Virus record (IMG/VR): IMGVR_UViG_3300034104_003795
Span: 62,001 to 126,000 of that record
Direction: 5' to 3' (one strand)
Length of the DNA: 64,000 nucleotides
How positions within the stretch are numbered: the first letter of the stretch is position 1; each line of letters starts with the position of its first letter. This document shows, in pieces, positions 24,959 to 43,046 of the stretch. The notes below the pieces were generated by a model, which ran no database searches, was not told the origin of the DNA, and saw only the letters and a program-made list of their open reading frames with translations. The position numbers were made by a program, and so were the translations under genes.

Positions 24959-24962
24959 GATG

Positions 24963-25133: not shown

Positions 25134-25158
25134 GGCGATACTATTTTTAATAACTATA

Positions 25159-25627: not shown

Positions 25628-25645
25628 AACTTATTTTTTATTTAG

Positions 25646-25719
25646 TGATTCGGAAAGGATTCGAACCTTTGACCCCAAACTTAGAAGGTTTGTGCTCTAT
25701 CCAGCTGAGCTACCGAACC
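25646..25719 (-). tRNA. tRNA-Arg(TCT)
   Basis: caaac-ctTCTaa-gtttg. Confidence 0.93.
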
Positions 25720-25722
25720 ATA

Positions 25723-25821
25723 TAGTAAGAGAGATACTACGTCTAATATCTCAATGTTTCTACCGGCCGTCTATGGAATATGCGCACTGACCATAAACTA
25801 AACTTTCGTCTGCTCTTACTA
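25723..25821 (-). ncRNA. candidate multibranch small RNA between tRNA-Asp and tRNA-Arg
   Basis: 9 bp closing stem TAGTAAGAG/CTCTTACTA plus three internal hairpins. Confidence 0.45.
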
Positions 25822-25825
25822 CTTG

Positions 25826-25896
25826 CGGAAAGTACGGGAATCGAACCCGTCACATTGCCGTGACAAGGCAACATTATACCGATTAACTAACTCTCC
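25826..25896 (-). tRNA. tRNA-Asp(GTC)
   Basis: ttgcc-ttGTCac-ggcaa, G73. Confidence 0.9.
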
Positions 25897-25925
25897 AAAT
25901 TACATTATCGTTCTTTAACTAATTT

Positions 25926-26183
25926 TTATTTTTTATTGTTAGTTAATTTTTGTTCTAATTTATCCAATCTCGAATCTAATTGAGAAAAGATGTGATTTTC
26001 TAATTCATCTGCTCTACGATTAAAGTCAGTTTGATTTCTATCAACTTGACGATACAAATCTTCGCCGATGCTTTCTAATTCTTTTTCTATTTTTCTTGCC
26101 TTAACAAGCCCAATAACAGCAACTATCGACACTGCGATAACCACCACTACAGACATTCCTAAAACGAATGATAATATTTCCAT
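25926..26183 (-). CDS. membrane-anchored coiled-coil protein
   Basis: N-terminal TM helix plus ...SQLDSRLDKLE; flanked by 15 bp inverted repeat. Confidence 0.7.
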   Translation of the reverse strand: MEILSFVLGMSVVVVIAVSIVAVIGLVKARKIEKELESIGEDLYRQVDRNQTDFNRRADELENHIFSQLDSRLDKLEQKLTNNKK

Positions 26184-26220
26184 AATTTATTTCTCCTATA
26201 TGTCAAAGAACGATAATGTG

Positions 26221-26293
26221 AGCCCAAGACAAGAATCGAACTTGCGACCTACTGATTACAAATCAGTTGCTCTACCTGCTGAGCTACTCGGGC
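26221..26293 (-). tRNA. tRNA-Thr(TGT)
   Basis: actga-ttTGTaa-tcagt. Confidence 0.93.
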
Positions 26294-26297
26294 GTTT

Positions 26298-26391
26298 AGG
26301 AAAGTAGAAGATGGGTGCGTGGACATCTACTTTTATGATTGGCATTTCTAACCGATTTATGCATACTAATATGCTTATCCCAATCAACCTT
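26298..26391 (-). ncRNA. candidate structured small RNA between tRNA-Glu and tRNA-Thr
   Basis: TGATTGG/CCAATCA, GCATA/TATGC and AAAGTAG/CTACTTT stems. Confidence 0.35.
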
Positions 26392-26393
26392 TG

Positions 26394-26465
26394 TACTCTG
26401 TACGGGATTCGAACCCGTATTACATCCGTGAAAGGGATGTGACCTAACCCTTAGTCGAACAGAGC
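26394..26465 (-). tRNA. tRNA-Glu(TTC)
   Basis: catcc-ctTTCac-ggatg. Confidence 0.93.
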
Positions 26466-26483
26466 GTTAATGTTAATGTTATA

Positions 26484-26515
26484 CAAATATACGAATAATA
26501 TCTGATATAACCAAA
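26484..26515 (-). promoter_or_regulatory. Bacteroidota sigma-A type promoter internal to the tRNA array
   Basis: TTTG-N20-TATATTTG. Confidence 0.75.
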
Positions 26516-26521
26516 TCTATT

Positions 26522-26665
26522 TTAACAATAGGTTTTATATTTTTTTATACCACCTTTCAAACGTCTTATACATATCATACAAGCTCCGTTTTCTCTTATT
26601 ATTTTTCTTATTCGGTATAACTTATTACTTCGTCTATTAATTTCAAACTTATCATTTTTCATAAT
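26522..26665 (-). CDS. small basic hypothetical protein
   Basis: Start trimmed to approximately MKNDKFE to clear tRNA-Ser. Confidence 0.35.
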   Translation of the reverse strand: MMKNDKFEINRRSNKLYRIRKIIRENGACMICIRRLKGGIKKYKTYC

Positions 26666-26678
26666 GTCCAATTTAATG

Positions 26679-26767
26679 CGGAGAATGTTGGATTCGAACC
26701 AACGGTACAACTTTCATCGTACAACGGTTTAGCAAACCGGCCCCATCGTCCACTCGGGCAATTCTCC
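26679..26767 (-). tRNA. tRNA-Ser(GCT)
   Basis: Loop ttGCTaa, long variable arm. Confidence 0.9.
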
Positions 26768-26771
26768 GTTG

Positions 26772-26844
26772 GGGTGTAAGGACGGTATCGAACCGTCTTA
26801 TCTAGCTCCACAAACTAGCGCATCACCTTAATGCTTCAAACACC
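26772..26844 (-). tRNA. tRNA-His(GTG)
   Basis: ctagt-ttGTGga-gctag, G-1/C73. Confidence 0.9.
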
Positions 26845-26847
26845 ATT

Positions 26848-26919
26848 TGGTTGCGGGGCCAGGAATCGAACCTGAATATCTGGCTTATGAGACCAAACGG
26901 ATTACCTAATCTCCCCACA
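26848..26919 (-). tRNA. tRNA-Met(CAT) with shortened D arm
   Basis: TGTGGGG/CCCCGCA-A-CCA, loop ctCATaa, D arm only GATT-AGGT-AATC. Confidence 0.75.
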
Positions 26920-26927
26920 ATATCAAG

Positions 26928-26998
26928 AGGCGAGTACAAGATTCGAACTTGTGTAAAAGCTTTTGCAGAGCTCCATATAACCACTCTAACAACTCGCC
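26928..26998 (-). tRNA. tRNA-Cys(GCA)
   Basis: gagct-ctGCAaa-agctt, U73. Confidence 0.92.
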
Positions 26999-27004
26999 AT
27001 TTTG

Positions 27005-27077
27005 TAGCCCCTAAAGGATTCGAACCCATACTCCGAAGTCCGTAGCTTCGTGTGCTAATCCATTACACCAAAGAGCC
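27005..27077 (-). tRNA. tRNA-Arg(ACG)
   Basis: cgaag-ctACGga-cttcg. Confidence 0.92.
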
Positions 27078-27081
27078 ATAG

Positions 27082-27152
27082 CACCGGTGGAAGGACTCGA
27101 ACCCTCACAAACAGTTTTGGAGACTGGTATGCTACCATTACACTACACCGAT
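27082..27152 (-). tRNA. tRNA-Trp(CCA)
   Basis: Loop ctCCAaa, G73. Confidence 0.9.
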
Positions 27153-27158
27153 ATATTG

Positions 27159-27232
27159 TTGGAATAAAAAGAATCGAACTTTTAACCTTCCGCGTATCAG
27201 ACGGATGCTCTAACCAATTGAGCTATATTCCA
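27159..27232 (-). tRNA. tRNA-Ile(GAT)
   Basis: tccgt-ctGATac-gcgga. Confidence 0.9.
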
Positions 27233-27280
27233 ATTTTGCACTTCCTATTTCCCAATGCTGTGTAGTGCGAACCATATCGG

Positions 27281-27354
27281 TTGGGAATGCAGGATTCGAA
27301 CCTACGGCCTCTAGCTCCCAAAGCTAGCGCGATACCTGACTACGCTAATTCCCA
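27281..27354 (-). tRNA. tRNA-Pro(TGG)
   Basis: ctagc-ttTGGga-gctag. Confidence 0.92.
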
Positions 27355-27429
27355 ATGTGATAAGTTTCCATCCTATCGTATAATGTGTACATCATTATTT
27401 TAACTCAATATTAAGTTCGGAACTTTTTG

Positions 27430-27503
27430 TGACCCCTAATGGATTCGAACCATTGACTCCTATATTAAAAGTATAGTGCTCTAACCAACTGAGCTAAGAG
27501 GTC
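27430..27503 (-). tRNA. tRNA-Lys(TTT)
   Basis: ctata-ctTTTaa-tatag. Confidence 0.93.
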
Positions 27504-27543
27504 TGACTTTTGTCATACTTGTCACTTTCCATAGTATTTGTTT

Positions 27544-27753
27544 TTAATTGTTATCTTCTAATTCTATTTTACAATATTCGTCCAATGATATTTTATCAAA
27601 TGTTATCCATTGTCCATTTCCAAAATCTACTGCGAACTTACCATCTTCTGGTAGATACGCAGTTACTATTCCTTTACTACCCATTTCAATTTTTCCTTTT
27701 GGTGTCACCAACTCTTTTATTAATGTACCAACTCCATGATTAAAATCTGCCAT
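27544..27753 (-). CDS. small SH3/beta-barrel-like hypothetical protein
   Basis: 69 aa ORF between tRNAs. Confidence 0.65.
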   Translation of the reverse strand: MADFNHGVGTLIKELVTPKGKIEMGSKGIVTAYLPEDGKFAVDFGNGQWITFDKISLDEYCKIELEDNN

Positions 27754-27775
27754 AATTGTTTTTTTAATTGTTAAG

Positions 27776-27848
27776 TGGTAATGAGTGGTATCGAACCACT
27801 TCCTAAAGATTTTCAGTCTTTCGCTTCTACCTAGTTAGCTTCATCACC
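27776..27848 (-). tRNA. tRNA-Phe(GAA)
   Basis: aaaga-ctGAAaa-tcttt. Confidence 0.92.
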
Positions 27849-27852
27849 GGTG

Positions 27853-27934
27853 TTGGGGTAGACGGACTCGAACCGCCGAACTCAAATGAGAGCTGATTTA
27901 CAGTCAGCCGCAATTGCCACTATGCGATACCCCA
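27853..27934 (-). tRNA. tRNA-Tyr(GTA)
   Basis: gctga-ctGTAaa-tcagc, long variable arm. Confidence 0.93.
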
Positions 27935-27939
27935 ATGGC

Positions 27940-28033
27940 GTTCCATATAACTCACATTTGATAGCCCTATCGTGCTACTCACTCAATCCTACAACAGCTT
28001 TCAACTGAGAGATTGTAGGAATGTGTATGGAAC
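27940..28033 (-). ncRNA. candidate three-way-junction small RNA between tRNA-Val and tRNA-Tyr
   Basis: GTTCCATA/TATGGAAC, CACATT/AATGTG, CCTACAA/TTGTAGG, CAGTT-GAAA-GCTG. Confidence 0.45.
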
Positions 28034-28039
28034 ATGTTG

Positions 28040-28114
28040 TGGAAGTTACAGGATTCGAACCTATGACCCTCACGGTGTAAACGTGATGCTCTAAACCAAC
28101 TGAGCTAAACTTCC
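28040..28114 (-). tRNA. tRNA-Val(TAC)
   Basis: tcacg-ttTACac-cgtga. Confidence 0.93.
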
Positions 28115-28122
28115 TACTTATC

Positions 28123-28140
28123 CAATATGTCAAAGAACTT
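28123..28140 (-). promoter_or_regulatory. rrn boxA-like antitermination element
   Basis: AAGTTCTTTGACATATTG just after the first tRNA of the array; related copies at 26197-26211, 29536-29547, 30018-30029. Confidence 0.55.
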
Positions 28141-28147
28141 AATCTTG

Positions 28148-28219
28148 CGCTCCCTCTTGGATTCGAACCAAGGACCAACAGATTAACAGTCTGCTGCGCT
28201 ACCGCTGCGCCAAAGGAGC
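28148..28219 (-). tRNA. tRNA-Asn(GTT)
   Basis: gcaga-ctGTTaa-tctgt. Confidence 0.93.
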
Positions 28220-28221
28220 TT

Positions 28222-28262
28222 AAAACGAAAAAACCTCTAACCGATTTTATTCAGTTAGAGGT
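28222..28262 (-). terminator. intrinsic terminator / attenuator directly upstream of tRNA-Asn
   Basis: ACCTCTAACTG-aataaaat-CGGTTAGAGGT followed by TTTTTCGTTTT. Confidence 0.8.
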
Positions 28263-28288
28263 CTTTCTATTTAAGTTAAGTTATGTAA

Positions 28289-28450
28289 TTACCCAACATC
28301 AGTGTCCTCTAACTGCTTCGTACTAATATAATCCACCTTGCCTAAATTTAAGTTTGCCGGATTACTTAACGTACTAAACATACGAATCCCAGCCCACTCA
28401 TTTCTCAATGTAGGTTGCGAACAATTTGTATGTAGTGTTAAAGTTTTCAT
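28289..28450 (-). CDS. putative attenuator leader peptide (53 aa, all 20 amino acids)
   Basis: MKTLTLHTNCSQPTLRNEWAGIRMFSTLSNPANLNLGKVDYISTKQLEDTDVG; codons 46-49 (CAGTTAGAGG) are the exact complement of the terminator 5' arm. Confidence 0.65.
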   Translation of the reverse strand: MKTLTLHTNCSQPTLRNEWAGIRMFSTLSNPANLNLGKVDYISTKQLEDTDVG

Positions 28451-28600
28451 CACTGTTTGTTTATATAAGTATATAATAATTTTATTTTCCGAATCTTTGT
28501 TAGTTTTATCAGGCTTAAATTGGGGAACATATTGATATGCCCCCCTTTTCAAGTTGTAATAAAAATTAAGATATGAAACGAACAACTTTTCAGTTGTTAG

Positions 28601-28646
28601 TAGCTCTCTCTATTGGAATCGAACCAATATGCAACCATTGAGAAAG
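28601..28646 (-). ncRNA. tRNA-like minihelix (acceptor stem plus T arm, no anticodon arm)
   Basis: CTTTCTC/GAGAGAG stem, ATTGG-TTCGATT-CCAAT T arm, 11-nt linker containing TGG. Confidence 0.5.
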
Positions 28647-28659
28647 TAAAAACGCTGAG

Positions 28660-29520
28660 AATATACGTTGGGATAACTAGCTTTAGAAAGATTATTTTGT
28701 TTCCTTTCGTTTCCACATCCTTTTGAGATGTACCAGTCAATGCAGGTTATTATAGATTAACCACTCTTAAAGTTGTAACTTACTCACCTATTACTCCCCT
28801 TATTCAATCCTGCCGAACTGATTAAACCTTGCGGGTCTATAAGCTTTTCGTAGATATCACATTCGCCTTGCGGGCGTTTGTGGCTGGGAACAACTCCCAA
28901 CTATGTATGCACCTTTCGGTCACAACTGATGAACACTTTTGCTTTTATTTATAATTGAATAATCAAATCCGCATTTGATAAAAGTTTTGGTTCGTAGATG
29001 GATTCAGGTAGCGGTTCACCACTAGCTCTGTCCCCTTTTGAAGAACAGAATACTATACTACCCGATGCGTTATCTCAACGCCATACTTCAAGTCATCTTC
29101 ATTAATAGGGATTGGTGTCCCATATTAAAGGATAGTAACGGCACCACCCGTACACAGTCTTATCTTACGTCCTTTCGGATAGCTTGATTGTCAAGACCAC
29201 TTTGGTATTGAATCACGCAATAATAAAAAGGGATTAGCTTTCTATTTCTTACAATAATCCTATGAGTTATTCTTATCGTTCTTCCGAACTCAACTGAACA
29301 ATCTACAATTGCTCAGTCACCCAAACTCTTCTGCTACAGTGTTACCCTCACATACAAAGCCCAAATGATATCTCACTTGCCTACTCAAGCTCATAACCTT
29401 ACAGGGATATGAACCGCAAAATGCTTAACCAAACATTTCACTTTATCCTACTTTCGTAGTTTATTTAATGACCATAGGCGGCCATTTTGTACACTATATA
29501 ACACGAAGTTATTATGTGTA
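28660..29520 (-). ncRNA. large structured ncRNA, GOLLD-like (~860 nt)
   Basis: No minus-strand ORF >=60 aa in the track, higher GC, many GNRA-capped hairpins (CTAC-GAAA-GTAG, TCC-GAAA-GGA, ACC-GAAA-GGT, two GCAA loops), own promoter, next to phage tRNA cluster; family name not confirmed by a covariance search. Confidence 0.7.
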
Positions 29521-29564
29521 AATTATTTCAATAATGTAAAGAACTTTGTTATTTGATAACTTTA

Positions 29565-29596
29565 TAAAGATACGAAATCTTTTTCAAACTACCAAA
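29565..29596 (-). promoter_or_regulatory. Bacteroidota-type promoter (array unit 1; drives the GOLLD-like RNA)
   Basis: TTTGGTAGTTTGAAAAAGATTTCG-TATCTTTA. Confidence 0.8.
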
Positions 29597-29606
29597 TTTA
29601 TTTTTA

Positions 29607-29663
29607 AAGATTCTCAATTTTGTTTTCTGGTCAAACCAATCAACTACTTTATTTTTGAATCTT
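29607..29663 (-). ncRNA. candidate small RNA 1 of the promoter array
   Basis: Starts just after its promoter; ends pair (AAGATTC/GAATCTT). Confidence 0.45.
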
Positions 29664-29665
29664 CA

Positions 29666-29697
29666 TAAAGATACGATAATTTTTTCAAACTACCAAA
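29666..29697 (-). promoter_or_regulatory. Bacteroidota-type promoter (array unit 2)
   Basis: TTTG-N20-TATCTTTA. Confidence 0.8.
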
Positions 29698-29708
29698 TCT
29701 TTTTTTAA

Positions 29709-29791
29709 AAGTTATTAAGGTATCCGGCTTTATTAGGAGCTTGCGCCCCTCACACAATCGGTTTTATTATTGTTGGCTTCAACCTTAACTT
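29709..29791 (-). ncRNA. candidate small RNA 2 of the promoter array
   Basis: Closing stem AAGTTAAGG/CCTTAATAACTT; internal GGGGC-GCAA-GCTCC GNRA hairpin. Confidence 0.55.
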
Positions 29792-29794
29792 TGT

Positions 29795-29826
29795 TAAAGA
29801 TACGAAAGTTTTTTCAAACTACCAAA
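29795..29826 (-). promoter_or_regulatory. Bacteroidota-type promoter (array unit 3)
   Basis: TTTG-N20-TATCTTTA. Confidence 0.8.
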
Positions 29827-29836
29827 TCTTTTTTTA

Positions 29837-29934
29837 AATCTATTATAATGGGGTTGGGTTGTACCCTTTTCAATCTGCTTTCACACCCATCACTCCCAAA
29901 GAGCTGTCAGTATCAGATACCACTATTATAGATT
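29837..29934 (-). ncRNA. candidate small RNA 3 (co-transcribed after tRNA-fMet)
   Basis: Long closing stem AATCTATAATAGTGG/CCATTATAATAGATT. Confidence 0.5.
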
Positions 29935-29937
29935 TTG

Positions 29938-30009
29938 TTGCGAGGGATGGATTCGAACCACCGGCCTCCAGGTTATGAGCCTGGCGAGCTACCACTGCTC
30001 TACCTCACG
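29938..30009 (-). tRNA. tRNA-fMet(CAT), initiator
   Basis: C1:A72 mismatch, ccagg-ctCATaa-cctgg. Confidence 0.9.
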
Positions 30010-31072: not shown

Positions 31073-31798
31073 TTATTTAGATTTTTGCATAATCTTTACC
31101 AATGACATTGCACTCTTTTTAACAGGAGCATCATCTTGATATCTAAGCGCAGATTGTACTTTTATATCTCTACCGGTTTCAGGATTTCTTACAGTTTTAT
31201 TAAGAATATCCTTTGGTAACATTTTGATTAATTTATCATCTCTTTCTGCAGATGATCCTGGTAAATTTTGTAAATTTCTTTGTGTACCTTTTTTTCTTTG
31301 AAATGCGAAAACTTGTTTGGTATTTCTCATTTTTGAATATGCTTGCTGCATTGTACCAGGATGCATATCCCCAACACTTTCTACTCTACCATTTTTATAA
31401 ACCAAAACACCTTTACCTTTGGTATCTTCGCCACCATACAAAACTGAATCCTGTGTGAATTCATTTCCTAATTGGTGAATATCTTTAATTGAAATGTTTG
31501 GAACGAATAAGGAAATTTCGGTTGAATCAACTAATTTATCTTTTGGACAATCAAAATAGTTTACTCTATTATCTTGACACTCTTGCCAATGACCTTCCAT
31601 CTCAAAAAATCCTAATCCTTTAGCTCTTATTTTATCCGCTAATATTTTGTTAGCCGCTTTATTTTCAGCAGGAGTATTTGCATATCTATAAGCAGTTATA
31701 ACTCCCCAACTTTTTACCTTCTTTTTACCTTGAACGTGTTGGAGAACCCTACCCAGTGAGGCTTCAGTTAGTTGTGCTATTTTACATCCTTTTTCCAT
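31073..31798 (-). CDS. conserved phage protein (DUF3293-like) with C-terminal NPETGRDIKVQSAL module
   Basis: E.SLGRV.QH, ITAYR, N...N..L, GHWQE, QDSVL. Confidence 0.6.
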   Translation of the reverse strand: MEKGCKIAQLTEASLGRVLQHVQGKKKVKSWGVITAYRYANTPAENKAANKILADKIRAKGLGFFEMEGHWQECQDNRVNYFDCPKDKLVDSTEISLFVPNISIKDIHQLGNEFTQDSVLYGGEDTKGKGVLVYKNGRVESVGDMHPGTMQQAYSKMRNTKQVFAFQRKKGTQRNLQNLPGSSAERDDKLIKMLPKDILNKTVRNPETGRDIKVQSALRYQDDAPVKKSAMSLVKIMQKSK

Positions 31799-32277: not shown

Positions 32278-32316
32278 CTTCGTCCATGTGTGGTTTATTT
32301 CGTTTAGGTGTGTAAC

Positions 32317-32961
32317 TTATTTTATTAGGTTGTGTTTAACCAATTGTTTAAATATATATTCCGATACTTTTCTATCAGATGGATAGTGTAATCCACTTAA
32401 TTCTCTTGCTCTCTTTATCTCGTGATAAAAATCATCAAGCTCTTCCGCTAATGCTGGATTCATCTTTCCAAAGTGATAAAGTATAACTAAAAAATCCATT
32501 GTGTGTCCAGATGGATATGCTGCCGAATTTGCATCAGTAGCGGTAATCGGATGTAAATCCAATCTTAACTCTTTAGCTAATTGATAAGGTCTTGGACGAT
32601 TGAATTTATCCTTTAAGTAAAACGTTATAGGGTCTATATCACCAACCCATTTTAGAATTTCTTCTTTACTCACATCTAATCCCAATTTCTTTGCTACAAT
32701 AACAAAAAAATCATAGTGATTTGTTTCTATCAACTTACAAAAACGGATATCATCTTCATCTGCGTTATTAGTTATCTTTGTAAGATATTCTAATTCGTTT
32801 TTTGTTTCATCAGATGAGTTAGCTGGAAATGGATGATTTTCTAATACATCTTTGATAATACCAGTTTCAATAGCAGCCTTTAATATACCGGCTCTATCCT
32901 CTTTAACTTTAGCTTCTTGCTCTCTAGTTGTATTACCATATTTAATATCATCCAAATTCAT
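32317..32961 (-). CDS. PAP2 superfamily phosphatase
   Basis: K..FNRPRP, YPSGH, RELSGLHYPSD. Confidence 0.88.
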   Translation of the reverse strand: MNLDDIKYGNTTREQEAKVKEDRAGILKAAIETGIIKDVLENHPFPANSSDETKNELEYLTKITNNADEDDIRFCKLIETNHYDFFVIVAKKLGLDVSKEEILKWVGDIDPITFYLKDKFNRPRPYQLAKELRLDLHPITATDANSAAYPSGHTMDFLVILYHFGKMNPALAEELDDFYHEIKRARELSGLHYPSDRKVSEYIFKQLVKHNLIK

Positions 32962-33401
32962 TAAACCTGCTTTCTTTTAAATATATCTATTATTTGTTTT
33001 ATCTTACTTTTCTTAAAGTGTCCAGAATCAATCACTTTAAAATTATTCCCGTTTCTGTCAATAAATTGCCAATGAGCTTCGGTTAATCCAAACCAATCGT
33101 CTAAATGATTTAAAACATCTTTTGGTTTAAAATTTGAACAACTATATAAATCAAACTGAAACATCGCTGGGTTTTCATTATCCCAAACGTGAATTGATGC
33201 GTGTGATGTAGCTAATGTAACAGTTCCGGTTATCCCTTCGTTACCCGGTTCATTAACATAAACCGAAGTGGGGCCGGCTACTACTTTCATTCCCACATTT
33301 TGTACTAATTGTGTAAACCAGATGTTTAACACTTTGTCTGTTTTTGGTGGAGTCTTTACATAACCCTTTACCAAAAGATGAAGATGGTTTGGTACGAACA
33401 T
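32961..33401 (-). CDS. speD: S-adenosylmethionine decarboxylase proenzyme
   Basis: G.TG...LATSHASIHVW (self-cleavage at TS/SH), DLYSC. Confidence 0.85.
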   Translation of the reverse strand: MFVPNHLHLLVKGYVKTPPKTDKVLNIWFTQLVQNVGMKVVAGPTSVYVNEPGNEGITGTVTLATSHASIHVWDNENPAMFQFDLYSCSNFKPKDVLNHLDDWFGLTEAHWQFIDRNGNNFKVIDSGHFKKSKIKQIIDIFKRKQV

Positions 33402-33438
33402 TATTTAAACTTTATTTATTTGTGTATATAAATATAAT

Positions 33439-33813
33439 TTAAATATTTTTAGGTTTTCTTCCTCTTTTTTTCTTTGGTTTTGGATTATCTTTCTCATTTT
33501 GCAGTTTAAGTATTTCTGCACATTTTTCATATTCCTCAACTTCAATATAATAATCCATCATTTTCTTTAATGTTAAATCTATATCATCTTTTGATATTAT
33601 AAAATCAACATTAATAGGTGGTTCAAATGTTCGTGGTGTTTTTGGTTTTTGTGCCAATTTAGGAGTAACTTGTAATATAACTCTATCATCTTCATCTGAT
33701 TGAAGAAAATCAAATACGTTAGAGTATATCGAATCCATTATCACTCCCTTATTCGCATCTGCCCATTGTTCTATGGGAGTGCCAAAATCTATGTATATTC
33801 TTTTTGGTGTCAT
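33439..33813 (-). CDS. hypothetical protein with UVR-like helix pair
   Basis: YIEVEEYEKCAEI motif, basic tail. Confidence 0.65.
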   Translation of the reverse strand: MTPKRIYIDFGTPIEQWADANKGVIMDSIYSNVFDFLQSDEDDRVILQVTPKLAQKPKTPRTFEPPINVDFIISKDDIDLTLKKMMDYYIEVEEYEKCAEILKLQNEKDNPKPKKKRGRKPKNI

Positions 33814-34439
33814 ATCTTTGGGAATAATATGTTTTCCATAAAATACTTTGCTTTTTCCTCACCAATTAGTGCTTTCAATGCTGAAAACGTTCTTGGGTTA
33901 GTAGCCTGTATTTGACAATAAATATTTTGTTTCTCTATTACACCTTCAATATTATCGGTTTTCTTTTCCAACCAAAGAAGTGAATTAAGATACCAATCGT
34001 ATTTTTCCACTACCCAATTACAAAAACGAACCAATTCCTCATCGGATTCCGGTTTTAACATAATAAATCTATCGGAAAAAACAGTAGCCCATTCAGGTAT
34101 CTTTTTTCTTTGTTTAAAATCCATACCATCATCAAAAGGATATGTTTTAAGACCAGGACTCAAATCCATATATGCACCCGTTACCATTTTTTCAGTTGAT
34201 ATAACATCAAATCCAAAAATAGGCTCTGGTGAATCTTTATGTGGGAATGTTGTAAAGTGTAGTACTTCTATTTTACCATCACCATATCTTTCCACGTGAG
34301 CCATACGAAATAACTTTGATTCATATCTAAAATTATCCCATCCATAATCTTCGGTTTCTAATGGTTGGCAATTAGGCGCCTTCTCCACCATCTCCTTCAA
34401 CGTCCACGCTAGCTGATTCAGATACTCTTTGTAATTCAT
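33810..34439 (-). CDS. ferredoxin-dependent bilin reductase (PcyA/PcyX/PebS family)
   Basis: RMAHVE, VLHF..FP....PIFGFD, DLSP, R..PEWA.VFS, Q..YC..Q..NPRT. Confidence 0.85.
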   Translation of the reverse strand: MNYKEYLNQLAWTLKEMVEKAPNCQPLETEDYGWDNFRYESKLFRMAHVERYGDGKIEVLHFTTFPHKDSPEPIFGFDVISTEKMVTGAYMDLSPGLKTYPFDDGMDFKQRKKIPEWATVFSDRFIMLKPESDEELVRFCNWVVEKYDWYLNSLLWLEKKTDNIEGVIEKQNIYCQIQATNPRTFSALKALIGEEKAKYFMENILFPKI

Positions 34440-34935
34440 CTAATATAGTTATGTTGTAATCCAATGCTTTGTTTGCTTCATCTGCCCATTCATCTTTTTG
34501 AATTGCTCTAATCGTTCCGGCAATTTCTCTAACATCACCCTCAAACTCATACATCTTACCACTTCCAGGTACATTCTTTTTCATCATCTGCCCACCAAAC
34601 ATAATTGCTAAGTAGTTTAGGTAAACGTGTGGAAGTATTTCTTCTTTACTCAATGTACGAAGGTATTTACGATATTCATTCGTTGCTACCAATGGTGTAA
34701 TTTGAATTTGAGTTTCTCCCATCAATTCTTTAATGTCCTCAAATACCTTACCAGCTCTATCTAAAGCTGGGTGTGGTAATTCATGTACTTCAATTGCATC
34801 AAATATTGCCAATTGCTGACACAAATACAAAATGTATTCTTCGTTTGATAATTCTCCTTTAAACATTCTTTGATTAAATGTCATCTTTTCTGCCAAAGAG
34901 TGCTTTTCAGCTATGGCTTCTTTTAATGGTAACAT
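34372..34935 (-). CDS. heme oxygenase
   Basis: LKE....H..AE (proximal His), Y...L.Q, HVYLNY...FGGQMM distal helix; overlaps the reductase start. Confidence 0.88.
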   Translation of the reverse strand: MLPLKEAIAEKHSLAEKMTFNQRMFKGELSNEEYILYLCQQLAIFDAIEVHELPHPALDRAGKVFEDIKELMGETQIQITPLVATNEYRKYLRTLSKEEILPHVYLNYLAIMFGGQMMKKNVPGSGKMYEFEGDVREIAGTIRAIQKDEWADEANKALDYNITILDELQRVSESASVDVEGDGGEGA

Positions 34936-35014
34936 ATTTTTATAATTTAATTTTTAGATAATACTCTGCCTTGTCATGTCTAAACATAACCTAAATGAAT
35001 TGATTTAGTTGATA

Positions 35015-35215
35015 CTAAAAATCCCCTTCTGTGTGTACAATGTTGTCATCCCAACCATCTCTACCTGCGGTTTTAGTCACATCATCATCTCCCCAGTCCA
35101 AAAAATCTTCTCCTTTGTAATCAGGATGATTCTTTTTCATGTGGTCAATTCCTCTTACCCATGACCAGCTTAGTAACGCTGTTGCGGCAACAACAAAAAT
35201 AATAATTCCCACCAT
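35015..35215 (-). CDS. small membrane-anchored protein
   Basis: TM helix then GID.M...HPDYKGED. Confidence 0.65.
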   Translation of the reverse strand: MVGIIIFVVAATALLSWSWVRGIDHMKKNHPDYKGEDFLDWGDDDVTKTAGRDGWDDNIVHTEGDF

Positions 35216-35251
35216 ATATTGTTTTTGTTTGTTTACCTCTCTATTGGACTT

Positions 35252-35824
35252 CTAGTCCCACCATCCTCTCAAATCACTACCATCGTATTTCTCCCAAGTA
35301 GTAAATTTTTTCCCTTTGAAGATGTCCCATAATTCCTTCCACTCCTTTTCTTCTATAACTCTTGCTCTCTTATATACTTTCCTAGCATGCTTCTTCTCAG
35401 CTGGCGTATCGTTATCTATCAATCTATAATTTCCATCTTCCGTTTTCTCAAACTCAAATTCACTACGATTTATCTTACCCAACTCATCCTCTGCTCTTTG
35501 GATATAATCATCATCCAACTTATGCTTCAATAACTCCAATGCTCTACGCATCTTTATTAACTTTATATTTCGGGTTTCAGCAACTTCTATTCCTTTTTCA
35601 CTCATTCCCTTCTCCATAATACTCAAAGAGCGATACATCATTTCTAAATGGAAACGATAATCCCACCACTGGTGATTGTATAACTCCTTTCTGAATCTCC
35701 ATACATTCTTAAAGAACAATGGAATATCATATCTTATAGCAGACCAAACTTTCCATAGGTTGCTATCATACCATACCAATTTCTCTAAGCTCTCAAAGAA
35801 TGAGTCTTTAAATTCTACTTTCAT
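35252..35824 (-). CDS. conserved phage hypothetical protein
   Basis: WDYRF.LE...GWWD pattern. Confidence 0.7.
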   Translation of the reverse strand: MKVEFKDSFFESLEKLVWYDSNLWKVWSAIRYDIPLFFKNVWRFRKELYNHQWWDYRFHLEMMYRSLSIMEKGMSEKGIEVAETRNIKLIKMRRALELLKHKLDDDYIQRAEDELGKINRSEFEFEKTEDGNYRLIDNDTPAEKKHARKVYKRARVIEEKEWKELWDIFKGKKFTTWEKYDGSDLRGWWD

Positions 35825-35990
35825 AACTTATTTTTTTTCTTAAAGAGGTCTGATAATTTGTTGCCTTCCTTTATAATCTTTCCAGTTTTCTCATCCATCA
35901 TTGGTGCTTTCCACATATGGTAAGCGATGAACAACCCACTAGCTATCATAGAAAGTCCGATAATTTCGATTGCACTCATAATTATTGTTT

Positions 35991-36839
35991 TTATAAATTT
36001 TCAATATACTCTCTTAATACATCCTTTGGTCTCCAATCAAGCCTATTTAATGCATCATCATTCTCTCTACGTGTTTCTTTGTAATTTCCTTTTTGATTAT
36101 CTATATAAAGTTTCTCACATCCAAATTTTTCAATAAAGATATCAGCCACTTCATTAATTGAATAATTAAATCCAGTACCCAATTCCCAAGCATCTTCGTG
36201 TTTTTCATCACTAAATGCAATCTTAATTAAACCATCAACAATATCATCAACATGCGTAAAATCTCTCCTTTGCTCACCATCACCAACTATTGTAATCTGT
36301 TTCCCTTCCGTAATCTGCCCTCTCCATAATCCAATTACAGCAGCCCACTCACCTTCGGTTATTTCCGTTGGGCCATACACATTATAGAAACGAGCTATCT
36401 CAATATTAGTACCAAATACTTTACGATACATTTTACAAATATCTTCACCTAACTTCTTATACATGGCATAAGGTGATTGATATGGGTCATGCCATTGTGA
36501 AGATGAACCCGAATATACTACCTTTACATTCCAGTTTCTAGCCCACTCACAAACCGCTTCCGTTCCAGATGTATTAACTCTGAAAAACTCCGATGGGGTT
36601 TCGAATGATGGTTGAATTCTACTCAATCCCGCTAAATGAAAACATATATCAACTTCTTCTCCGCTGATGTAATCTATTTGTTCAACATTCATTGGTAAGT
36701 ACCGTACTCCTTCTATTTGATTTTCTACTTTACCAGTAGAATAATCATCAATTACAATTACTTTATGTCCTTCGTTGTGAAGTCTTTTTACTAAATTAGT
36801 TCCTACGAAACCAACTCCGCCTGTTACTACTATATTCAT
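35991..36839 (-). CDS. NAD-dependent epimerase/dehydratase
   Basis: TGGVGFVG, HLAG, SSS, YAMYK (YxxxK), RFYNVYGP, RRDFTHV.D. Confidence 0.92.
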   Translation of the reverse strand: MNIVVTGGVGFVGTNLVKRLHNEGHKVIVIDDYSTGKVENQIEGVRYLPMNVEQIDYISGEEVDICFHLAGLSRIQPSFETPSEFFRVNTSGTEAVCEWARNWNVKVVYSGSSSQWHDPYQSPYAMYKKLGEDICKMYRKVFGTNIEIARFYNVYGPTEITEGEWAAVIGLWRGQITEGKQITIVGDGEQRRDFTHVDDIVDGLIKIAFSDEKHEDAWELGTGFNYSINEVADIFIEKFGCEKLYIDNQKGNYKETRRENDDALNRLDWRPKDVLREYIENL

Positions 36840-36840
36840 A

Positions 36841-37131
36841 CTATGCCGTTTTTTCTATTCTTATTGTTATACCCGCTGGCCCAGCGTTTACAAAATATTT
36901 ATTGTACTTATTATCGTTTATCCACCCGTATTTATGAAATCTGAAAATAATTACATCATTACCTTCAAACCAACAATGTATGGCGTTTGTAGCGTAATCA
37001 ATGGATGGTTCTTTTAAAACTCCCATCTTCCAACTATTTACAAATTCCGGTTCCAATTCATCCGGTAGAATGTTTATTATCATTTCCAAAGTATTTGAAT
37101 CAATATTATCGCCACACTCAATCCCAAACAA
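36841..37131 (-). CDS. hypothetical protein
   Basis: 96 aa ORF. Confidence 0.6.
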   Translation of the reverse strand: MFGIECGDNIDSNTLEMIINILPDELEPEFVNSWKMGVLKEPSIDYATNAIHCWFEGNDVIIFRFHKYGWINDNKYNKYFVNAGPAGITIRIEKTA

Positions 37132-38006: not shown

Positions 38007-38399
38007 TTAATTATATGTTTCAAATCTTAAATCATCTTCATCGGATGGTTTGTTGTGTGGCTTTGGTCTTCCGTTTTCATCTACTGCAACAAATACAATT
38101 TTATCTATTCGGATAATTGTTTGTTTTGTATCTTTGTTTCGTACTTCACAACTTATTGTTACCGATGTTGTACCAAATTGTACTAACTGACAACCTATCT
38201 CAATGATATCACCTGTTTTTGCAGATGCTACAAAGTTGATTTCACTCATTGCCTTTGTAACAATACTACGTTCACCTAATTGACAAATTGTAAATATGGA
38301 TGCTTCTTCATCAATCCACTTCAATACCTGTCCACCAAATAGTGTACCTCTGGCATTTAAATCTTCCGGCTTAATTAATTTTCTCGTTCTGAATATCAT
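38007..38399 (-). CDS. acyl-CoA thioesterase (hotdog fold, YciA-like)
   Basis: DLNARGTLFGG..LKWIDE, F.ASA..GD, V.VD..GRP. Confidence 0.88.
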   Translation of the reverse strand: MIFRTRKLIKPEDLNARGTLFGGQVLKWIDEEASIFTICQLGERSIVTKAMSEINFVASAKTGDIIEIGCQLVQFGTTSVTISCEVRNKDTKQTIIRIDKIVFVAVDENGRPKPHNKPSDEDDLRFETYN

Positions 38400-38638: not shown

Positions 38639-39289
38639 TTATTTCTTTTTTATTATTAAAGGAATTATAAATGCTAATAAGGTTAAGATTGAAAATACGG
38701 CATCAATCGCTTCCGTATTCAAATCATGCAACCAATACGATGATACTAACTTCAATCCCAATGCTCCAATTACCCAATATGCTACTCTCTCCAATATTGG
38801 ATTCTTCTCTAATACTTTCACAAACTTTGTTGTTGCAAATCTCATAGCAAGGATACCAATAAACACACCACCACATATCAACCATAAGTTAGGGGTGAAT
38901 GCAACAGCGGCAAATACATTATCAATACTGAATACCAAATCCATCATCTCAATTGCTACGATTGTAGACCATAATGCTGATAAGAATGGTATCTTAATTG
39001 TCATCTTACTACCACCATCCGTTTCAACTTTTGATGATAGGGCGTTATATGCTAAATACATAAGATATAAGCCACCTGCTACTTTTAACCATACCAATTT
39101 GATAAGAACCGATGCAAATAGTAAGGCCAATCCTCTAAAAAGGTAAGCTCCTGCTATACCGTATGTTAGTGCTTTCTTTTGTTGGTCTTTTGGCAGTTCC
39201 TTTACCATCGCAGCCAGTACAGCAGCATTGTCTATGCTGAGTACAATTTCCAAAATCATTATGTTTAGGAAAATCAGTAACTCTGTCAT
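38639..39289 (-). CDS. terC: TerC family membrane protein
   Basis: LEIVLSIDNA, G..GAY.FR, E.MDLVFSIDNVFAA. Confidence 0.9.
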   Translation of the reverse strand: MTELLIFLNIMILEIVLSIDNAAVLAAMVKELPKDQQKKALTYGIAGAYLFRGLALLFASVLIKLVWLKVAGGLYLMYLAYNALSSKVETDGGSKMTIKIPFLSALWSTIVAIEMMDLVFSIDNVFAAVAFTPNLWLICGGVFIGILAMRFATTKFVKVLEKNPILERVAYWVIGALGLKLVSSYWLHDLNTEAIDAVFSILTLLAFIIPLIIKKK

Positions 39290-41623: not shown

Positions 41624-41806
41624 TTATTGTTTAGGACTCGTTTTTTTGACCTCTTTTATACCCGCTGCCCATTTTCTTTTTAATCTAAAAAATATGTAAT
41701 TAAAAATTAAGTATGTATTCCAAACAATAGCTACAATTATACCAATAGCAATTATCGGTAACATAATTAGATAGGTCAATAATTTAATCAGTATATTTTT
41801 TATCAT
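41624..41806 (-). CDS. small membrane protein
   Basis: Hydrophobic 60 aa ORF. Confidence 0.45.
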
Positions 41807-42135
41807 AGGGAGAATGATTCACCACATCCACAGGTTCTACTAGCGTTTGGATTTTCCCATTGGAATCCTTTACCATTTAATCCATCTGAATATGTTAATT
41901 GAGTACCATAAAGATATAGTAAACTCTTTCTATCAATTACTACTTTCAATCCACCATCCACCTGAACTACTTCATCGGTTGGTTCTATCTTATCATCAAA
42001 ATCCATTGTGTAAGATAATCCACTACACCCACCACCCTTCACACCAACTCGTAAGTTATGCGTATCAGGTGTTAAACCACCTTCCACCATTAATTCAATT
42101 ACATGCTCTAATGCTTTAGGTTGTAGTGTTACCAT
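41803..42135 (-). CDS. iscA: Fe-S cluster assembly A-type carrier
   Basis: [15 protein letters not shown] and [12 protein letters not shown]. Confidence 0.95.
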
Positions 42136-42447: not shown

Positions 42448-42636
42448 TTATAATGCGTGATGTTTAGGTATTATCGCCCAAGCTATAAAGTAAAACATAA
42501 TAACGGGTACGGGTGCAAATATTAGGGTTAGAAAAACGATTCTCCAAACCGATGGGTCACTATTTGTATAAAGTGCTAACCCACCACATATACCTGCTAT
42601 TTTCTTCTCATAACGGCTTCTAAACAATCTTCTCAT
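42448..42636 (-). CDS. PspC domain protein
   Basis: LFRSR..KKIAGICGGLA.Y...D...R...Y..AW.IIP. Confidence 0.88.
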   Translation of the reverse strand: MRRLFRSRYEKKIAGICGGLALYTNSDPSVWRIVFLTLIFAPVPVIMFYFIAWAIIPKHHAL

Positions 42637-43046
42637 TAGTGTAGTTTTTCTTCAAATTGTAATGGCTCTAAACCATTCTTTGTTCTATAATCGTTAATAG
42701 CAGCTTGAACCGCATCTTGAGCAAGAACCGAACAATGTATCTTAACAGGTGGTAGAGATAATTCCTCAACCAAATCCATATTATCTAACTTTGCCGCCTC
42801 ATCCACACTCTTACCCTTTAACCATTCAGTTGCTAGGGAAGATGCAGCAATTGCCGAACCACATCCAAACGTTTTAAATTTCGCATCGGTTATGATTCCA
42901 TCTTCAATCTCTATTTGGAGTCTCATTACATCACCACATTCAGGTGCTCCAACTAACCCAGTCCCCACTGTTGATTTACTTTTATCCAACGTACCAACAT
43001 TGCGCGGGTTTTGGTAATGGTCTATTACCTTTTCTCCGTATGCCAT
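42636..43046 (-). CDS. iscU: Fe-S cluster scaffold
   Basis: DHY.NPRN.G, GAPECGD, FGCGSA, LPPVKIHC. Confidence 0.95.
   Translation of the reverse strand: MAYGEKVIDHYQNPRNVGTLDKSKSTVGTGLVGAPECGDVMRLQIEIEDGIITDAKFKTFGCGSAIAASSLATEWLKGKSVDEAAKLDNMDLVEELSLPPVKIHCSVLAQDAVQAAINDYRTKNGLEPLQFEEKLH

What the first reader, a model, noticed from the sequence alone, without database searches (positions are those of the whole stretch)
33810..34935. Heme oxygenase plus bilin reductase operon in a phage of non-photosynthetic Bacteroidota
Seen: overlapping HO and FDBR genes. Established: the pair converts heme to biliverdin and then to a phycobilin. It is known from cyanophages (ho1 with pebS or pcyA) and from the HemO/PcyX pair attributed to alphaproteobacterial phages. 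Inference: with no phycobiliprotein host, the bilin must do something else, such as iron release for the IscA/IscU pathway also encoded here, antioxidant or photoprotection, phytochrome signalling, or removal of heme or regulatory ligands.
Basis: partly seen in the sequence, partly recalled or inferred. Interest (0 to 1): 0.65.

Follow-up and report, generated by a model that had tools for sequence, protein, structure and literature searches.

The report
Phage heme-to-bilin gene pair
A 274-kb lake phage that most likely infects non-photosynthetic Bacteroidota carries an overlapping heme oxygenase and bilin reductase gene pair, a known kind of phage metabolic cassette, here with a new reductase lineage and in a new host group, and its purpose is still unproven.

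Summary
Two minus-strand ORFs at 34372-34935 (heme oxygenase, HO) and 33810-34439 (ferredoxin-dependent bilin reductase, FDBR) overlap by 68 nt. Both pass Pfam cut-offs, fold confidently onto solved HO and PcyA structures, keep the catalytic residues and are under purifying selection.

The window lies in a 273,997-bp freshwater jumbo myophage. A Bacteroidota host is supported. Its genes lack Shine-Dalgarno sites and have an A-rich -12..-10, as in a Flavobacterium phage and unlike the Microcystis, Synechococcus and Pelagibacter phage controls. Its IscU is up to 84% identical to Bacteroidota IscU. It has no psbA, CpeT or ferredoxin.

The FDBR belongs to a large, uncharacterised viral clade next to PcyX and apart from cyanobacterial PcyA. 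All members keep the PcyA triad Glu/His/Asp, so phycocyanobilin is the predicted product, not phycoerythrobilin. HO sits directly upstream in 45 of 47 related viral contigs, and no third gene is conserved. FDBR was absent from 400 sampled Bacteroidota genomes.

HO-FDBR cassettes in phages of heterotrophs are already published, so this is a new member of a known kind. Iron release for the phage's IscU/IscA is my favoured purpose, but it is only inferred.

The parts
34372..34935 (-). Heme oxygenase gene (187 aa), first gene of the cassette
   Evidence: PF01126 4.3e-15. The AF2 model has pLDDT 91.8 and matches Synechocystis HO-1, HmuO and human HO-1/2 at TMq 0.74-0.82. His12 (proximal ligand), Glu16, Tyr105 and Gly114-Gly115 are invariant and Gln116 nearly invariant in 22 homologues. 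dN/dS is 0.13-0.21.
33810..34439 (-). Ferredoxin-dependent bilin reductase gene (209 aa), second gene of the cassette
   Evidence: PF05996 1.6e-22. The best PDB sequence hits are PcyX 5owg at 1.8e-19, then PcyA. The AF2 model has pLDDT 86.2 and TMq 0.82-0.85 to PcyA structures. Glu50/His61/Asp78 correspond to PcyA Glu76/His88/Asp105 and are present in every clade member examined. dN/dS is 0.04-0.23.
34372..34439 (-). 68-nt out-of-frame overlap between the HO 3' end and the FDBR 5' end, which suggests translational coupling
   Evidence: Read directly from the sequence. The two ORFs overlap in almost every related locus, by up to 68 nt. The HO C-terminal tail varies between relatives, whereas the FDBR N-terminus is conserved.
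33439..33813 (-). ORF of 124 aa whose start overlaps the FDBR stop (ATGA). Function unknown. Not part of the conserved cassette.
   Evidence: No Pfam or PHROG match. Found downstream of the FDBR in only 10 of 48 non-redundant loci, all close relatives.
42636..43046 (-). IscU Fe-S scaffold gene. Context for the iron hypothesis and a marker of host origin.
   Evidence: PF01592 1.5e-50. Up to 84% identical to IscU in sampled Bacteroidota genomes, against a maximum of 74% in 300 Pseudomonadota. The nearest Atlas clusters are mostly Bacteroidota.
41803..42135 (-). IscA-type Fe-S carrier gene (context)
   Evidence: PF01521 3.4e-16. Found together with IscU and the cassette in several relatives.

Best explanation
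This is a real, functional two-gene heme-breakdown cassette carried as an auxiliary metabolic module by a freshwater jumbo myophage that most likely infects Bacteroidota.

Shown or strongly supported by sequence and structure:
- Gene 1 is a canonical-fold heme oxygenase, which would open host heme to biliverdin, Fe2+ and CO.
- Gene 2 is a PcyA/PcyX-lineage bilin reductase.
- The two genes overlap and always travel together.
- The phage brings an activity that sampled Bacteroidota genomes lack.

Inferred:
- Because the reductase keeps the full PcyA triad (Glu50/His61/Asp78) rather than the Asp of PcyX, it probably reduces biliverdin by four electrons to phycocyanobilin.
- It would have to use host ferredoxin or another host donor, since the phage encodes none.

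More speculative:
- The pair serves to strip iron from host heme during infection. The reductase would pull the reaction by clearing biliverdin.
- The iron would feed the phage's own IscU/IscA Fe-S assembly and other iron enzymes.
- On this view the bilin is a by-product, not a pigment.
For: Identity and function of the two genes:
- Pfam matches, PDB sequence matches with aligned catalytic residues, and confident models matching PcyA and HO structures.
- Catalytic residues are conserved in every homologue examined.
- dN/dS is 0.04-0.23.

Cassette:
- HO lies directly upstream of the FDBR in 45 of 47 IMG/VR loci and in all metagenome contigs read.
- No third gene is conserved.

Host:
- SD-like sites occur upstream of 4% of 296 genes, the same as the in-gene control, and positions -12..-10 are 66% A.
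- This matches Flavobacterium phage immuto (0%, 64%). It differs from Microcystis phage Mel-JY01 (44%, 33%), Pelagibacter phage Mosig (54%, 37%) and Synechococcus phage S-CRM01 (14%, 36%).
- TAnnTTTG occurs 52 times in intergenic DNA, against 16.3 +/- 3.8 in shuffles.
- IscU is 84% identical to Bacteroidota IscU, against at most 74% in Pseudomonadota.
- The major capsid protein is 51.6% identical to that of the Flavobacterium phage.
- The phage encodes bS21, as do lake phages predicted to infect Bacteroidetes (PMC9723584).

Product:
- Glu76 is essential for D-ring vinyl reduction in PcyA and is Asp in PcyX (PMC13446030).
- The freshwater phage CB_2 enzyme, which lacks that Asp, makes PCB (PMC11480375).

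Purpose:
- IscU and IscA lie 7-9 kb upstream on the same strand.
- The phage has no CpeT, GAF, Fer2, Fer4, flavodoxin, psbA or ferrochelatase.
- FDBR was found in 0 of 400 other Bacteroidota genomes, and PHY domains in only 22 of 401.
- Iron supply has been proposed for such cassettes in the literature (PMC11480375).
Against: - No enzyme assay exists for this clade.
- The HO has Ala110-Ile111 where HO-1 has Gly139-Asp140. That Asp matters for oxygen activation in HO-1 and HmuO (from my own knowledge), so the chemistry could be altered.
- At the position of PcyA Asp220 the reductase has Pro, as PcyX does. Product prediction in FDBRs is notoriously unreliable (PMC13446030).
- The host assignment rests on indirect signals. 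The capsid and polymerase are equally or more similar to a Microcystis phage, and there is no CRISPR spacer or culture evidence.
- The iron idea rests only on co-location and on the absence of bilin-binding genes. IscU/IscA accompany the cassette only in the closer relatives.
- A related phage has a CpeT-family gene directly upstream of HO, which hints at a use for the bilin itself.
Confidence: 0.6

Rival explanations
1. The bilin itself is the point. The phage makes PCB (or PEB) as a ligand or chromophore for a phage or host protein such as a lyase-like carrier, a photoreceptor or a regulator, so that infection responds to light or redox state.
For: A related SD-type phage has a CpeT-family (T-type bilin lyase/binder) gene immediately upstream of HO-FDBR on 217-kb and 115-kb contigs. 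Phage CB_2 HemO/PcyA can load a phytochrome in E. coli (PMC11480375). A four-electron reductase seems more elaborate than iron release alone would need.
Against: This genome has no CpeT, GAF or phycobilisome-type gene. No third gene is conserved next to the cassette across 48 loci. Only 22 of 401 sampled Bacteroidota have a PHY domain, usually beside their own HO. Such bacteriophytochromes use biliverdin (from my own knowledge), so the reductase would remove their chromophore rather than supply it.
Confidence: 0.2
2. The host is a cyanobacterium after all, and the cassette tops up phycobilisome pigment as in cyanophages.
For: The closest cultured match for the DNA polymerase (47.7%), and a joint closest match for the capsid (51.7%), is Microcystis phage Mel-JY01. 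The phage comes from lakes, where cyanobacteria are common. It carries a cobS-like gene, as cyanophages do.
Against: The Microcystis phage uses SD sites in 44% of genes and this phage in 4%. The A-rich -12..-10 signal is absent from the Microcystis and Synechococcus phage controls. Mel-JY01 has no FDBR. There is no psbA, CpeT or ferredoxin. The FDBR lies outside the cyanobacterial and cyanophage PcyA clades. IscU is closest to Bacteroidota.
Confidence: 0.06
3. The purpose is to remove heme or to produce CO or an antioxidant. This would lower host heme to cripple respiration, catalase or heme-sensing defences, or use the bilin as a radical scavenger, rather than to harvest iron.
For: The chemistry is the same as in the best explanation. 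No iron-storage or iron-transport gene was seen beside the cassette. The cassette occurs in phages with both types of translation-start signal and without IscU in many loci.
Against: No positive evidence was found here. Heme removal or CO production alone would not obviously need a conserved reductase partner, yet the reductase is conserved.
Confidence: 0.14

Closest known systems
HemO-PcyX cassette of marine pelagimyophages (PcyX_EBK42635, PDB 5OWG; Pelagibacter phage Mosig)
   Same: The order is HO then FDBR, with overlapping genes, in a T4-like phage of a non-photosynthetic host. The FDBR is in the same broad non-cyanobacterial (AX-like) lineage. It shares His and Asp at the PcyA His88 and Asp105 positions, and Pro at the Asp220 position.
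   Different: Identity is only 34% (FDBR) and 29% (HO). The window's FDBR is in a separate, strongly supported clade. It has Glu where PcyX has the product-determining Asp. The HO distal helix reads Ala-Ile instead of Gly-Asp. The setting is freshwater with a Bacteroidota-type host, not marine SAR11.
vHemO/vPcyA of freshwater jumbo phage CB_2 (PMC11480375; bioRxiv 10.1101/2020.02.13.942896)
   Same: It is a freshwater large phage of a heterotroph. Its FDBR lacks the PcyX Asp and was shown to make PCB. The purpose of that cassette is also called enigmatic, with iron supply discussed.
   Different: CB_2 is predicted to infect an alphaproteobacterial methanotroph. It also carries alaS, and its cassette is interrupted by one gene. 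I could not place its sequence in my tree because no reference copy was available in the tools, so whether it belongs to the same FDBR clade is unknown.
Cyanobacterial and cyanophage PcyA (e.g. PDB 2D1E; P-SSM4 pcyA)
   Same: It has the same fold (TMq 0.82-0.85) and the same Glu/His/Asp catalytic triad.
   Different: Identity is 25-29%. The window's protein is about 40 residues shorter and has Pro instead of Asp220. It falls outside the cyanobacterial/cyanophage clade. In the cyanophage loci read, pcyA is not paired with an HO.
Cyanophage ho1 with pebS (P-SSM2)
   Same: It is a phage-borne route from heme to a four-electron-reduced bilin.
   Different: PebS is 18% identical and has Asn at the His88 position and no Glu76 equivalent. 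It serves as the distant outgroup in both trees.

Membership tests
Canonical heme oxygenase (PF01126; HO-1/HmuO type) | Profile match above the curated threshold | tested here: met
   56.5 bits against a cut-off of 23, E 4.3e-15
Canonical heme oxygenase (PF01126; HO-1/HmuO type) | All-helical HO fold | tested here: met
   AF2 pLDDT 91.8. TMq 0.74-0.82 to 1we1, 1iw1, 1n3u and 2q32.
Canonical heme oxygenase (PF01126; HO-1/HmuO type) | Proximal His ligand and distal-helix Gly-Gly | tested here: met
   His12, Gly114 and Gly115 align to HO-1 His25, Gly143 and Gly144, and are invariant in 22 homologues.
Canonical heme oxygenase (PF01126; HO-1/HmuO type) | Distal Gly139-Asp140 of HO-1 (water network for O2 activation) | tested here: not met
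   The residues are Ala110-Ile111 here and Ala-Ile/Leu in close relatives. Phage Mosig HemO keeps Gly-Asp. From memory, this Asp is not universal in bacterial HOs, so this is a caution rather than an exclusion.
Canonical heme oxygenase (PF01126; HO-1/HmuO type) | Converts heme to biliverdin IX-alpha | not testable with these tools
   Needs an enzyme assay.
FDBR, PcyA/PcyX lineage (PF05996) | Profile match and alpha/beta/alpha sandwich fold | tested here: met
   80.7 bits against a cut-off of 31. AF2 pLDDT 86.2 and TMq 0.82-0.85 to PcyA.
FDBR, PcyA/PcyX lineage (PF05996) | His88 and Asp105 equivalents | tested here: met
   His61 and Asp78 are invariant.
PcyA (phycocyanobilin-forming) | Glu76 equivalent, needed for D-ring vinyl reduction | tested here: met
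   Glu50 is present in all 36 viral FDBR rows outside the PcyX clade in the 51-row set, including the window's. The role of Glu76 is taken from PMC13446030.
PcyA (phycocyanobilin-forming) | Placement within the cyanobacterial or alphaproteobacterial PcyA clades | tested here: not met
   It falls in a separate viral clade (98-100% support) beside PcyX, away from cyanobacterial and cyanophage PcyA. Its relation to alphaproteobacterial PcyA is unresolved; Roseomonas sits on a long branch.
PcyA (phycocyanobilin-forming) | Product is PCB | not testable with these tools
   Needs HPLC or phytochrome loading after co-expression.
PcyX (phycoerythrobilin-forming phage FDBR) | Asp in place of PcyA Glu76 | tested here: not met
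   Glu here. Asp in phage Mosig PcyX and its three relatives.
PcyX (phycoerythrobilin-forming phage FDBR) | Membership of the PcyX clade | tested here: not met
   The PcyX clade is separately supported at 100%. Identity is 34%.
Phage hemO-FDBR auxiliary cassette of heterotroph phages | HO immediately upstream of a four-electron-type FDBR in a phage genome that lacks photosynthesis genes | tested here: met
Phage of Bacteroidota | Bacteroidota-type gene expression signals (no SD, A-rich spacer, TAnnTTTG) | tested here: met
   with four control phages.
Phage of Bacteroidota | Host-derived gene closest to Bacteroidota | tested here: met
   IscU reaches 84% identity in Bacteroidota and at most 74% in Pseudomonadota. 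Only these two phyla were compared.
Phage of Bacteroidota | Direct link to a host (CRISPR spacer, prophage, culture) | not tested

The most novel reading that the evidence does not exclude
Phages of lake Bacteroidota make phycocyanobilin inside cells that have no phycobiliproteins, no FDBR and mostly no phytochrome. The bilin, not the iron, would then be the functional product. It could, for example, be bound by an unrecognised phage or host protein to sense light or redox state, or to regulate tetrapyrrole metabolism during infection. That would be a new biological role for a 'photosynthetic' pigment in heterotrophs.
Probability: 0.15. Interest if true: 0.8.

Novelty: new member of a known kind. 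Interest (0 to 1): 0.45.

Why it matters
Phage HO-FDBR cassettes outside cyanophages are a recognised puzzle, and the papers that assayed them call their purpose enigmatic. This locus adds three things:

- It adds a third host group (Bacteroidota, major degraders of organic matter in lakes) where the host itself lacks the reductase.
- It reveals a large viral FDBR clade, unassayed in the papers found here and seen in 47 IMG/VR contigs and over 200 metagenome proteins. The clade keeps the PcyA triad although it sits beside PcyX, which makes it a natural test case for what decides PCB versus PEB formation.
- The module is strictly two genes and has moved between phages with different translation-start signals, so any explanation must work without a dedicated bilin-binding partner.

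If the iron idea is right, heme mining would be a general phage strategy in iron-poor waters.

Tried and rejected
- A megablast of 20 kb of the window against cultured phages found nothing.
- The sigma-70 promoter and terminator scans around the cassette were no better than shuffles. No clean TAnnTTTG sits in the 79-nt gap before HO, so the cassette is probably co-transcribed with upstream genes.
- These Pfam families gave no match in the whole 274-kb genome: CpeT, Fer2, GAF, Photo_RC, T9SS tail, Fer4, flavodoxin, ferrochelatase.
- The 190-aa, 66-aa and 124-aa ORFs flanking the cassette have no Pfam or PHROG match. They are conserved only in close relatives, so I rejected them as general cassette partners.
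- The Atlas look-up of the phage bS21 returned only viral clusters and said nothing about the host.
- The phage tmRNA is the one-piece type. I considered it as a host clue but judged it too weak.
- Metatranscriptome contigs lie on the FDBR (252 nt, no mismatch). DNA carry-over cannot be excluded, so expression is not shown.
- MAG labels on HO-FDBR contigs (Crocinitomicaceae, Verrucomicrobiales, Anaerolineales, Proteobacteria) were rejected as host evidence. The contigs are short or carry phage genes, and their start signals do not fit the labels.
- Literature searches combining bilin reductase or heme oxygenase with Bacteroidetes or jumbo phage gave no paper.
- One call failed on a handle format and was corrected.
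- I did not run complex prediction either, because I make no binding claim.
- The search for homologous proteins sees only proteins of 0.55-1.75 times the query length, so fusions or fragments of the FDBR would have been missed.
Full report
**What is there.** On the minus strand, an ORF at 34372-34935 (187 aa) is followed by an ORF at 33810-34439 (209 aa). The two overlap by 68 nt.
- The first ORF matches Pfam Heme_oxygenase at 4.3e-15, and the second matches Fe_bilin_red at 1.6e-22. Both are well above the curated cut-offs.
- The stop of the second gene overlaps the ATG of a 124-aa ORF of unknown function (ATGA at 33810-33813).
- Some database homologues of the reductase were called from Met17. 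However, residues 1-16 are conserved in the longer homologues and form a confident helix in the model, whereas the overlapping C-terminal tail of the HO varies between relatives. I therefore take the long form and the 68-nt overlap as real.

**Are the two proteins likely active?**
- *Heme oxygenase.* The HO aligns to solved heme oxygenases with His12 on the proximal histidine and Gly114-Gly115-Gln116 on the distal-helix motif. His12, Glu16, Tyr105, Gly114 and Gly115 are invariant in 22 homologues. An AlphaFold model (pLDDT 91.8) matches Synechocystis HO-1, HmuO and human HO-1/2 at TM 0.74-0.82. One departure is that the Gly139-Asp140 of HO-1 is Ala110-Ile111 here and in close relatives, while the Pelagibacter phage enzyme keeps Gly-Asp.
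- *Reductase.* The best sequence hits among solved structures are PcyX (1.8e-19), then PcyA. The model (pLDDT 86.2) matches PcyA structures at TM 0.82-0.85. Glu50, His61 and Asp78 align with the PcyA catalytic triad Glu76/His88/Asp105 and are conserved in every clade member examined.
- *Selection.* Pairwise dN/dS against eight relatives is 0.04-0.23 for the reductase and 0.13-0.21 for the HO.

**What carries it.** The window is bases 62001-126000 of a 273,997-bp IMG/VR viral record, rated complete by CheckV.
- The genome has 33% G+C, and nearly all genes are on one strand.
- It encodes a T4-type major capsid protein, tail sheath, family-B DNA polymerase, UvsX, helicases, ribonucleotide reductase and several giant ORFs.
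- It also carries 26 tRNAs, a tmRNA and a GOLLD RNA.
- Near-identical DNA occurs in lake-water metagenomes from 17 studies.

**Which host?** The nearest cultured phages by capsid are Flavobacterium phage immuto (51.6%), Microcystis phage Mel-JY01 (51.7%) and Rhodothermus phage RM378 (39.6%). By polymerase, Mel-JY01 is closest at 47.7%. Kinship alone therefore does not decide between Bacteroidota and cyanobacteria. Several other lines point to Bacteroidota.
- *Translation-start signals.* I compared start regions using one ORF caller for all genomes. This is the signature of Bacteroidota translation initiation (PMC7797042).

| Phage | Genes | SD-like site at -17..-4 | A at -12..-10 |
|---|---|---|---|
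| This phage (in-gene control 4%) | 296 | 4% | 66% |
| Flavobacterium phage immuto | 41 | 0% | 64% |
| Microcystis phage Mel-JY01 | 39 | 44% | 33% |
| Pelagibacter phage Mosig | 50 | 54% | 37% |
| Synechococcus phage S-CRM01 | 69 | 14% | 36% |

- *Promoter motif.* The Bacteroidota -7 motif TAnnTTTG occurs 52 times in 24 kb of intergenic DNA on the coding strand, against 16.3 +/- 3.8 in shuffles, mostly 14-50 nt before starts. The related TAnnTTTA is also frequent, so this is weaker evidence.
- *IscU.* The phage IscU is 78-84% identical to the IscU of 16 of 301 sampled Bacteroidota genomes. The best of 300 sampled Pseudomonadota reaches 74%. Its nearest Atlas clusters are mostly Bacteroidota.
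- *bS21.* The genome encodes ribosomal protein bS21. Lake jumbo myophages with bS21 were predicted, partly through a Flavobacterium CRISPR spacer, to infect Bacteroidetes (PMC9723584). In that study the gene sits in the structural module, which is not the case here.
- *Absent cyanophage genes.* There is no psbA, CpeT, plant-type ferredoxin or GAF gene.

I put the Bacteroidota host at about 0.75 and a cyanobacterial host at about 0.06.

**Where the reductase sits among known enzymes.**
- The reductase of the cultured Pelagibacter phage Mosig is nearly identical to PcyX_EBK42635 (E 1.8e-138), so I used it as the PcyX reference.
- In a careful tree of 36 sequences and a quick tree of 51, the window's protein falls in a strongly supported viral clade (100/99 and 98). 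That clade lies beside the PcyX clade (100) and a Roseomonas sequence. Together they are separated from cyanobacterial and cyanophage PcyA, with PebS as a distant outgroup. This matches the published non-cyanobacterial 'AX' lineage of alphaproteobacterial PcyA plus phage PcyX (PMC10151467).
- All 36 viral FDBR rows outside the PcyX clade (the window's clade plus a small neighbouring one) have Glu-His-Asp. The four PcyX-clade sequences have Asp-His-Asp.
- Glu76 is required for the D-ring vinyl reduction that leads to phycocyanobilin, and its replacement by Asp marks PcyX, which makes phycoerythrobilin (PMC13446030). The freshwater phage CB_2 enzyme, which lacks that Asp, was shown to make phycocyanobilin (PMC11480375).
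- I therefore predict phycocyanobilin, at roughly 0.55-0.6. At the PcyA Asp220 position the protein has Pro, as in PcyX, and FDBR products are hard to predict.

**How general is the cassette?**
- The word search found 223 related proteins, all unnamed, down to about 60% identity among those listed.
- A scan of IMG/VR found 47 loci at 36-100% identity, many on contigs of 100-310 kb.
- An HO ORF lies directly upstream in 45 of the 47 loci and nearly always overlaps the FDBR. The other two loci begin at the reductase.
- Among 48 non-redundant loci, no third gene family is shared by more than 14, and those 14 are the close relatives of this phage. The unit is therefore two genes.
- By my thresholds, 31 of the 47 loci are low-GC and SD-free like this phage, and 16 are higher-GC and SD-using. 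This label changes at least three times on the tree, so the cassette has moved between phages of different host types.
- One SD-type relative has a CpeT-family gene immediately before HO. This genome has none.

**What the host would contribute.** I sampled about 400 genomes evenly from the phylum of a Crocinitomicaceae MAG.
- FDBR was found only in that MAG itself, on a contig that looks phage-derived. The other 400 had none.
- PHY domains occur in 22 of 401 genomes and HO in 26 of 401, mostly side by side as bphO-bphP pairs.
- The phage encodes no ferredoxin of either common type, no flavodoxin and no ferrochelatase.

So the phage adds a pathway that the host lacks, must borrow host reductant, and for most hosts there is no known bilin receptor.

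**Most likely working, and what is shown versus inferred.**
- *Shown by sequence and structure.* This is an HO and a PcyA/PcyX-type reductase, intact, conserved and tightly coupled.
- *Inferred from family knowledge.* Heme is converted to biliverdin plus Fe2+ plus CO, and biliverdin to phycocyanobilin.
- *Speculative.* The benefit is iron release from host heme, with the reductase clearing biliverdin. This would feed the phage's IscU and IscA at 42636-43046 and 41803-42135 on the same strand. The supports are the co-location, the lack of any conserved bilin-binding partner, and the published suggestion of iron supply for such cassettes (PMC11480375).
- *Against the iron idea.* IscU/IscA accompany the cassette only in closer relatives, and a CpeT neighbour in one relative suggests the bilin can matter.

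**Expression.** A freshwater metatranscriptome library holds a 252-nt contig identical to the reductase at 33923-34174, and another spanning the reductase 3' end and the next ORF. DNA carry-over cannot be excluded, so this is only a hint. The DNA runs show many co-existing variants of this region.

**Novelty.** HO-FDBR cassettes in phages of non-photosynthetic hosts are published for marine pelagiphages and for freshwater phages of methanotrophs. The function of these cassettes is openly unresolved (PMC11480375; bioRxiv 10.1101/2020.02.13.942896). I found no paper linking such a cassette to Bacteroidota phages. The library does not hold many subscription papers, so this absence is weak. I rate the finding a new member of a known kind, with moderate interest.

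Noticed in passing
window 28652-29065 (-): A full-length GOLLD RNA (Rfam RF02032, 306.8 bits, model positions 1-416) sits inside the tRNA cluster of the phage.
   Followed up: no
window 23230-30009 (-): An array of 26 tRNA genes covers all 20 amino acids, including three tRNA-Met(CAT) genes.
   Followed up: no
L008:7074-7460 (-) = genome 171074-171460: The phage encodes a one-piece tmRNA (RF00023, 83 bits, E 8e-31). ARAGORN reads an unusually long tag ending in LAVAA.
   Followed up: partly
window 58123-58389 (-): A ribosomal protein bS21 homologue (88 aa, PF01165 1.5e-12) lies away from the structural module. This differs from the published lake bS21 phages, where it lies among the capsid genes (PMC9723584).
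   Followed up: partly
window 32961-33401 (-) and 31073-31798 (-): A SAM decarboxylase (PF02675) and a SAM lyase-family protein (PF23780) lie just downstream of the cassette. They are syntenic with it in close relatives.
   Followed up: no
window 46566-47771 (-) and 47938-50205 (-): A CobS-like AAA ATPase (phrog_249, 'porphyrin biosynthesis') lies next to a 755-aa protein with a weak CobT VWA match. This is the pair common in cyanophages, here in a non-cyanophage.
   Followed up: no
window 17626-19161 (-): A 511-aa protein matches the PHROG family for tryptophan halogenase at 3e-98.
   Followed up: no
L015:4936-6642 (JGI 3300043325, 217-kb contig); also L016, L017: A related phage with higher GC and SD-type starts has a CpeT-family (bilin lyase/binder) gene directly upstream of HO-FDBR, forming a three-gene row.
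   Followed up: partly
L028, L029, L030, L041 (genome contigs MAGs): HO-FDBR cassettes on MAG contigs labelled Proteobacteria, Anaerolineales, Verrucomicrobiales and Crocinitomicaceae. Three of them (not L028) fall in the PcyX clade. L030 and L041 also carry genes shared with this phage, and the contigs' start signals do not fit the labels. They are probably mis-binned phage contigs.
   Followed up: partly
genome 185836-195045, 197089-208278, 209289-221843, 255527-262966 (L009-L011, L014): Four giant ORFs of 3069, 3729, 4184 and 2479 aa lie in the structural half of the genome. They were not annotated here.
   Followed up: no
window 32300-36900: Lake metagenome contigs covering this region break into many short pieces with numerous variant positions. 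This indicates several co-existing strains of the phage at high depth.
   Followed up: no
window 45726-46391, 38639-39289, 38007-38399 (-): GTP cyclohydrolase I, a TerC-family membrane protein and a 4HBT thioesterase lie in the same gene-dense auxiliary region.
   Followed up: no
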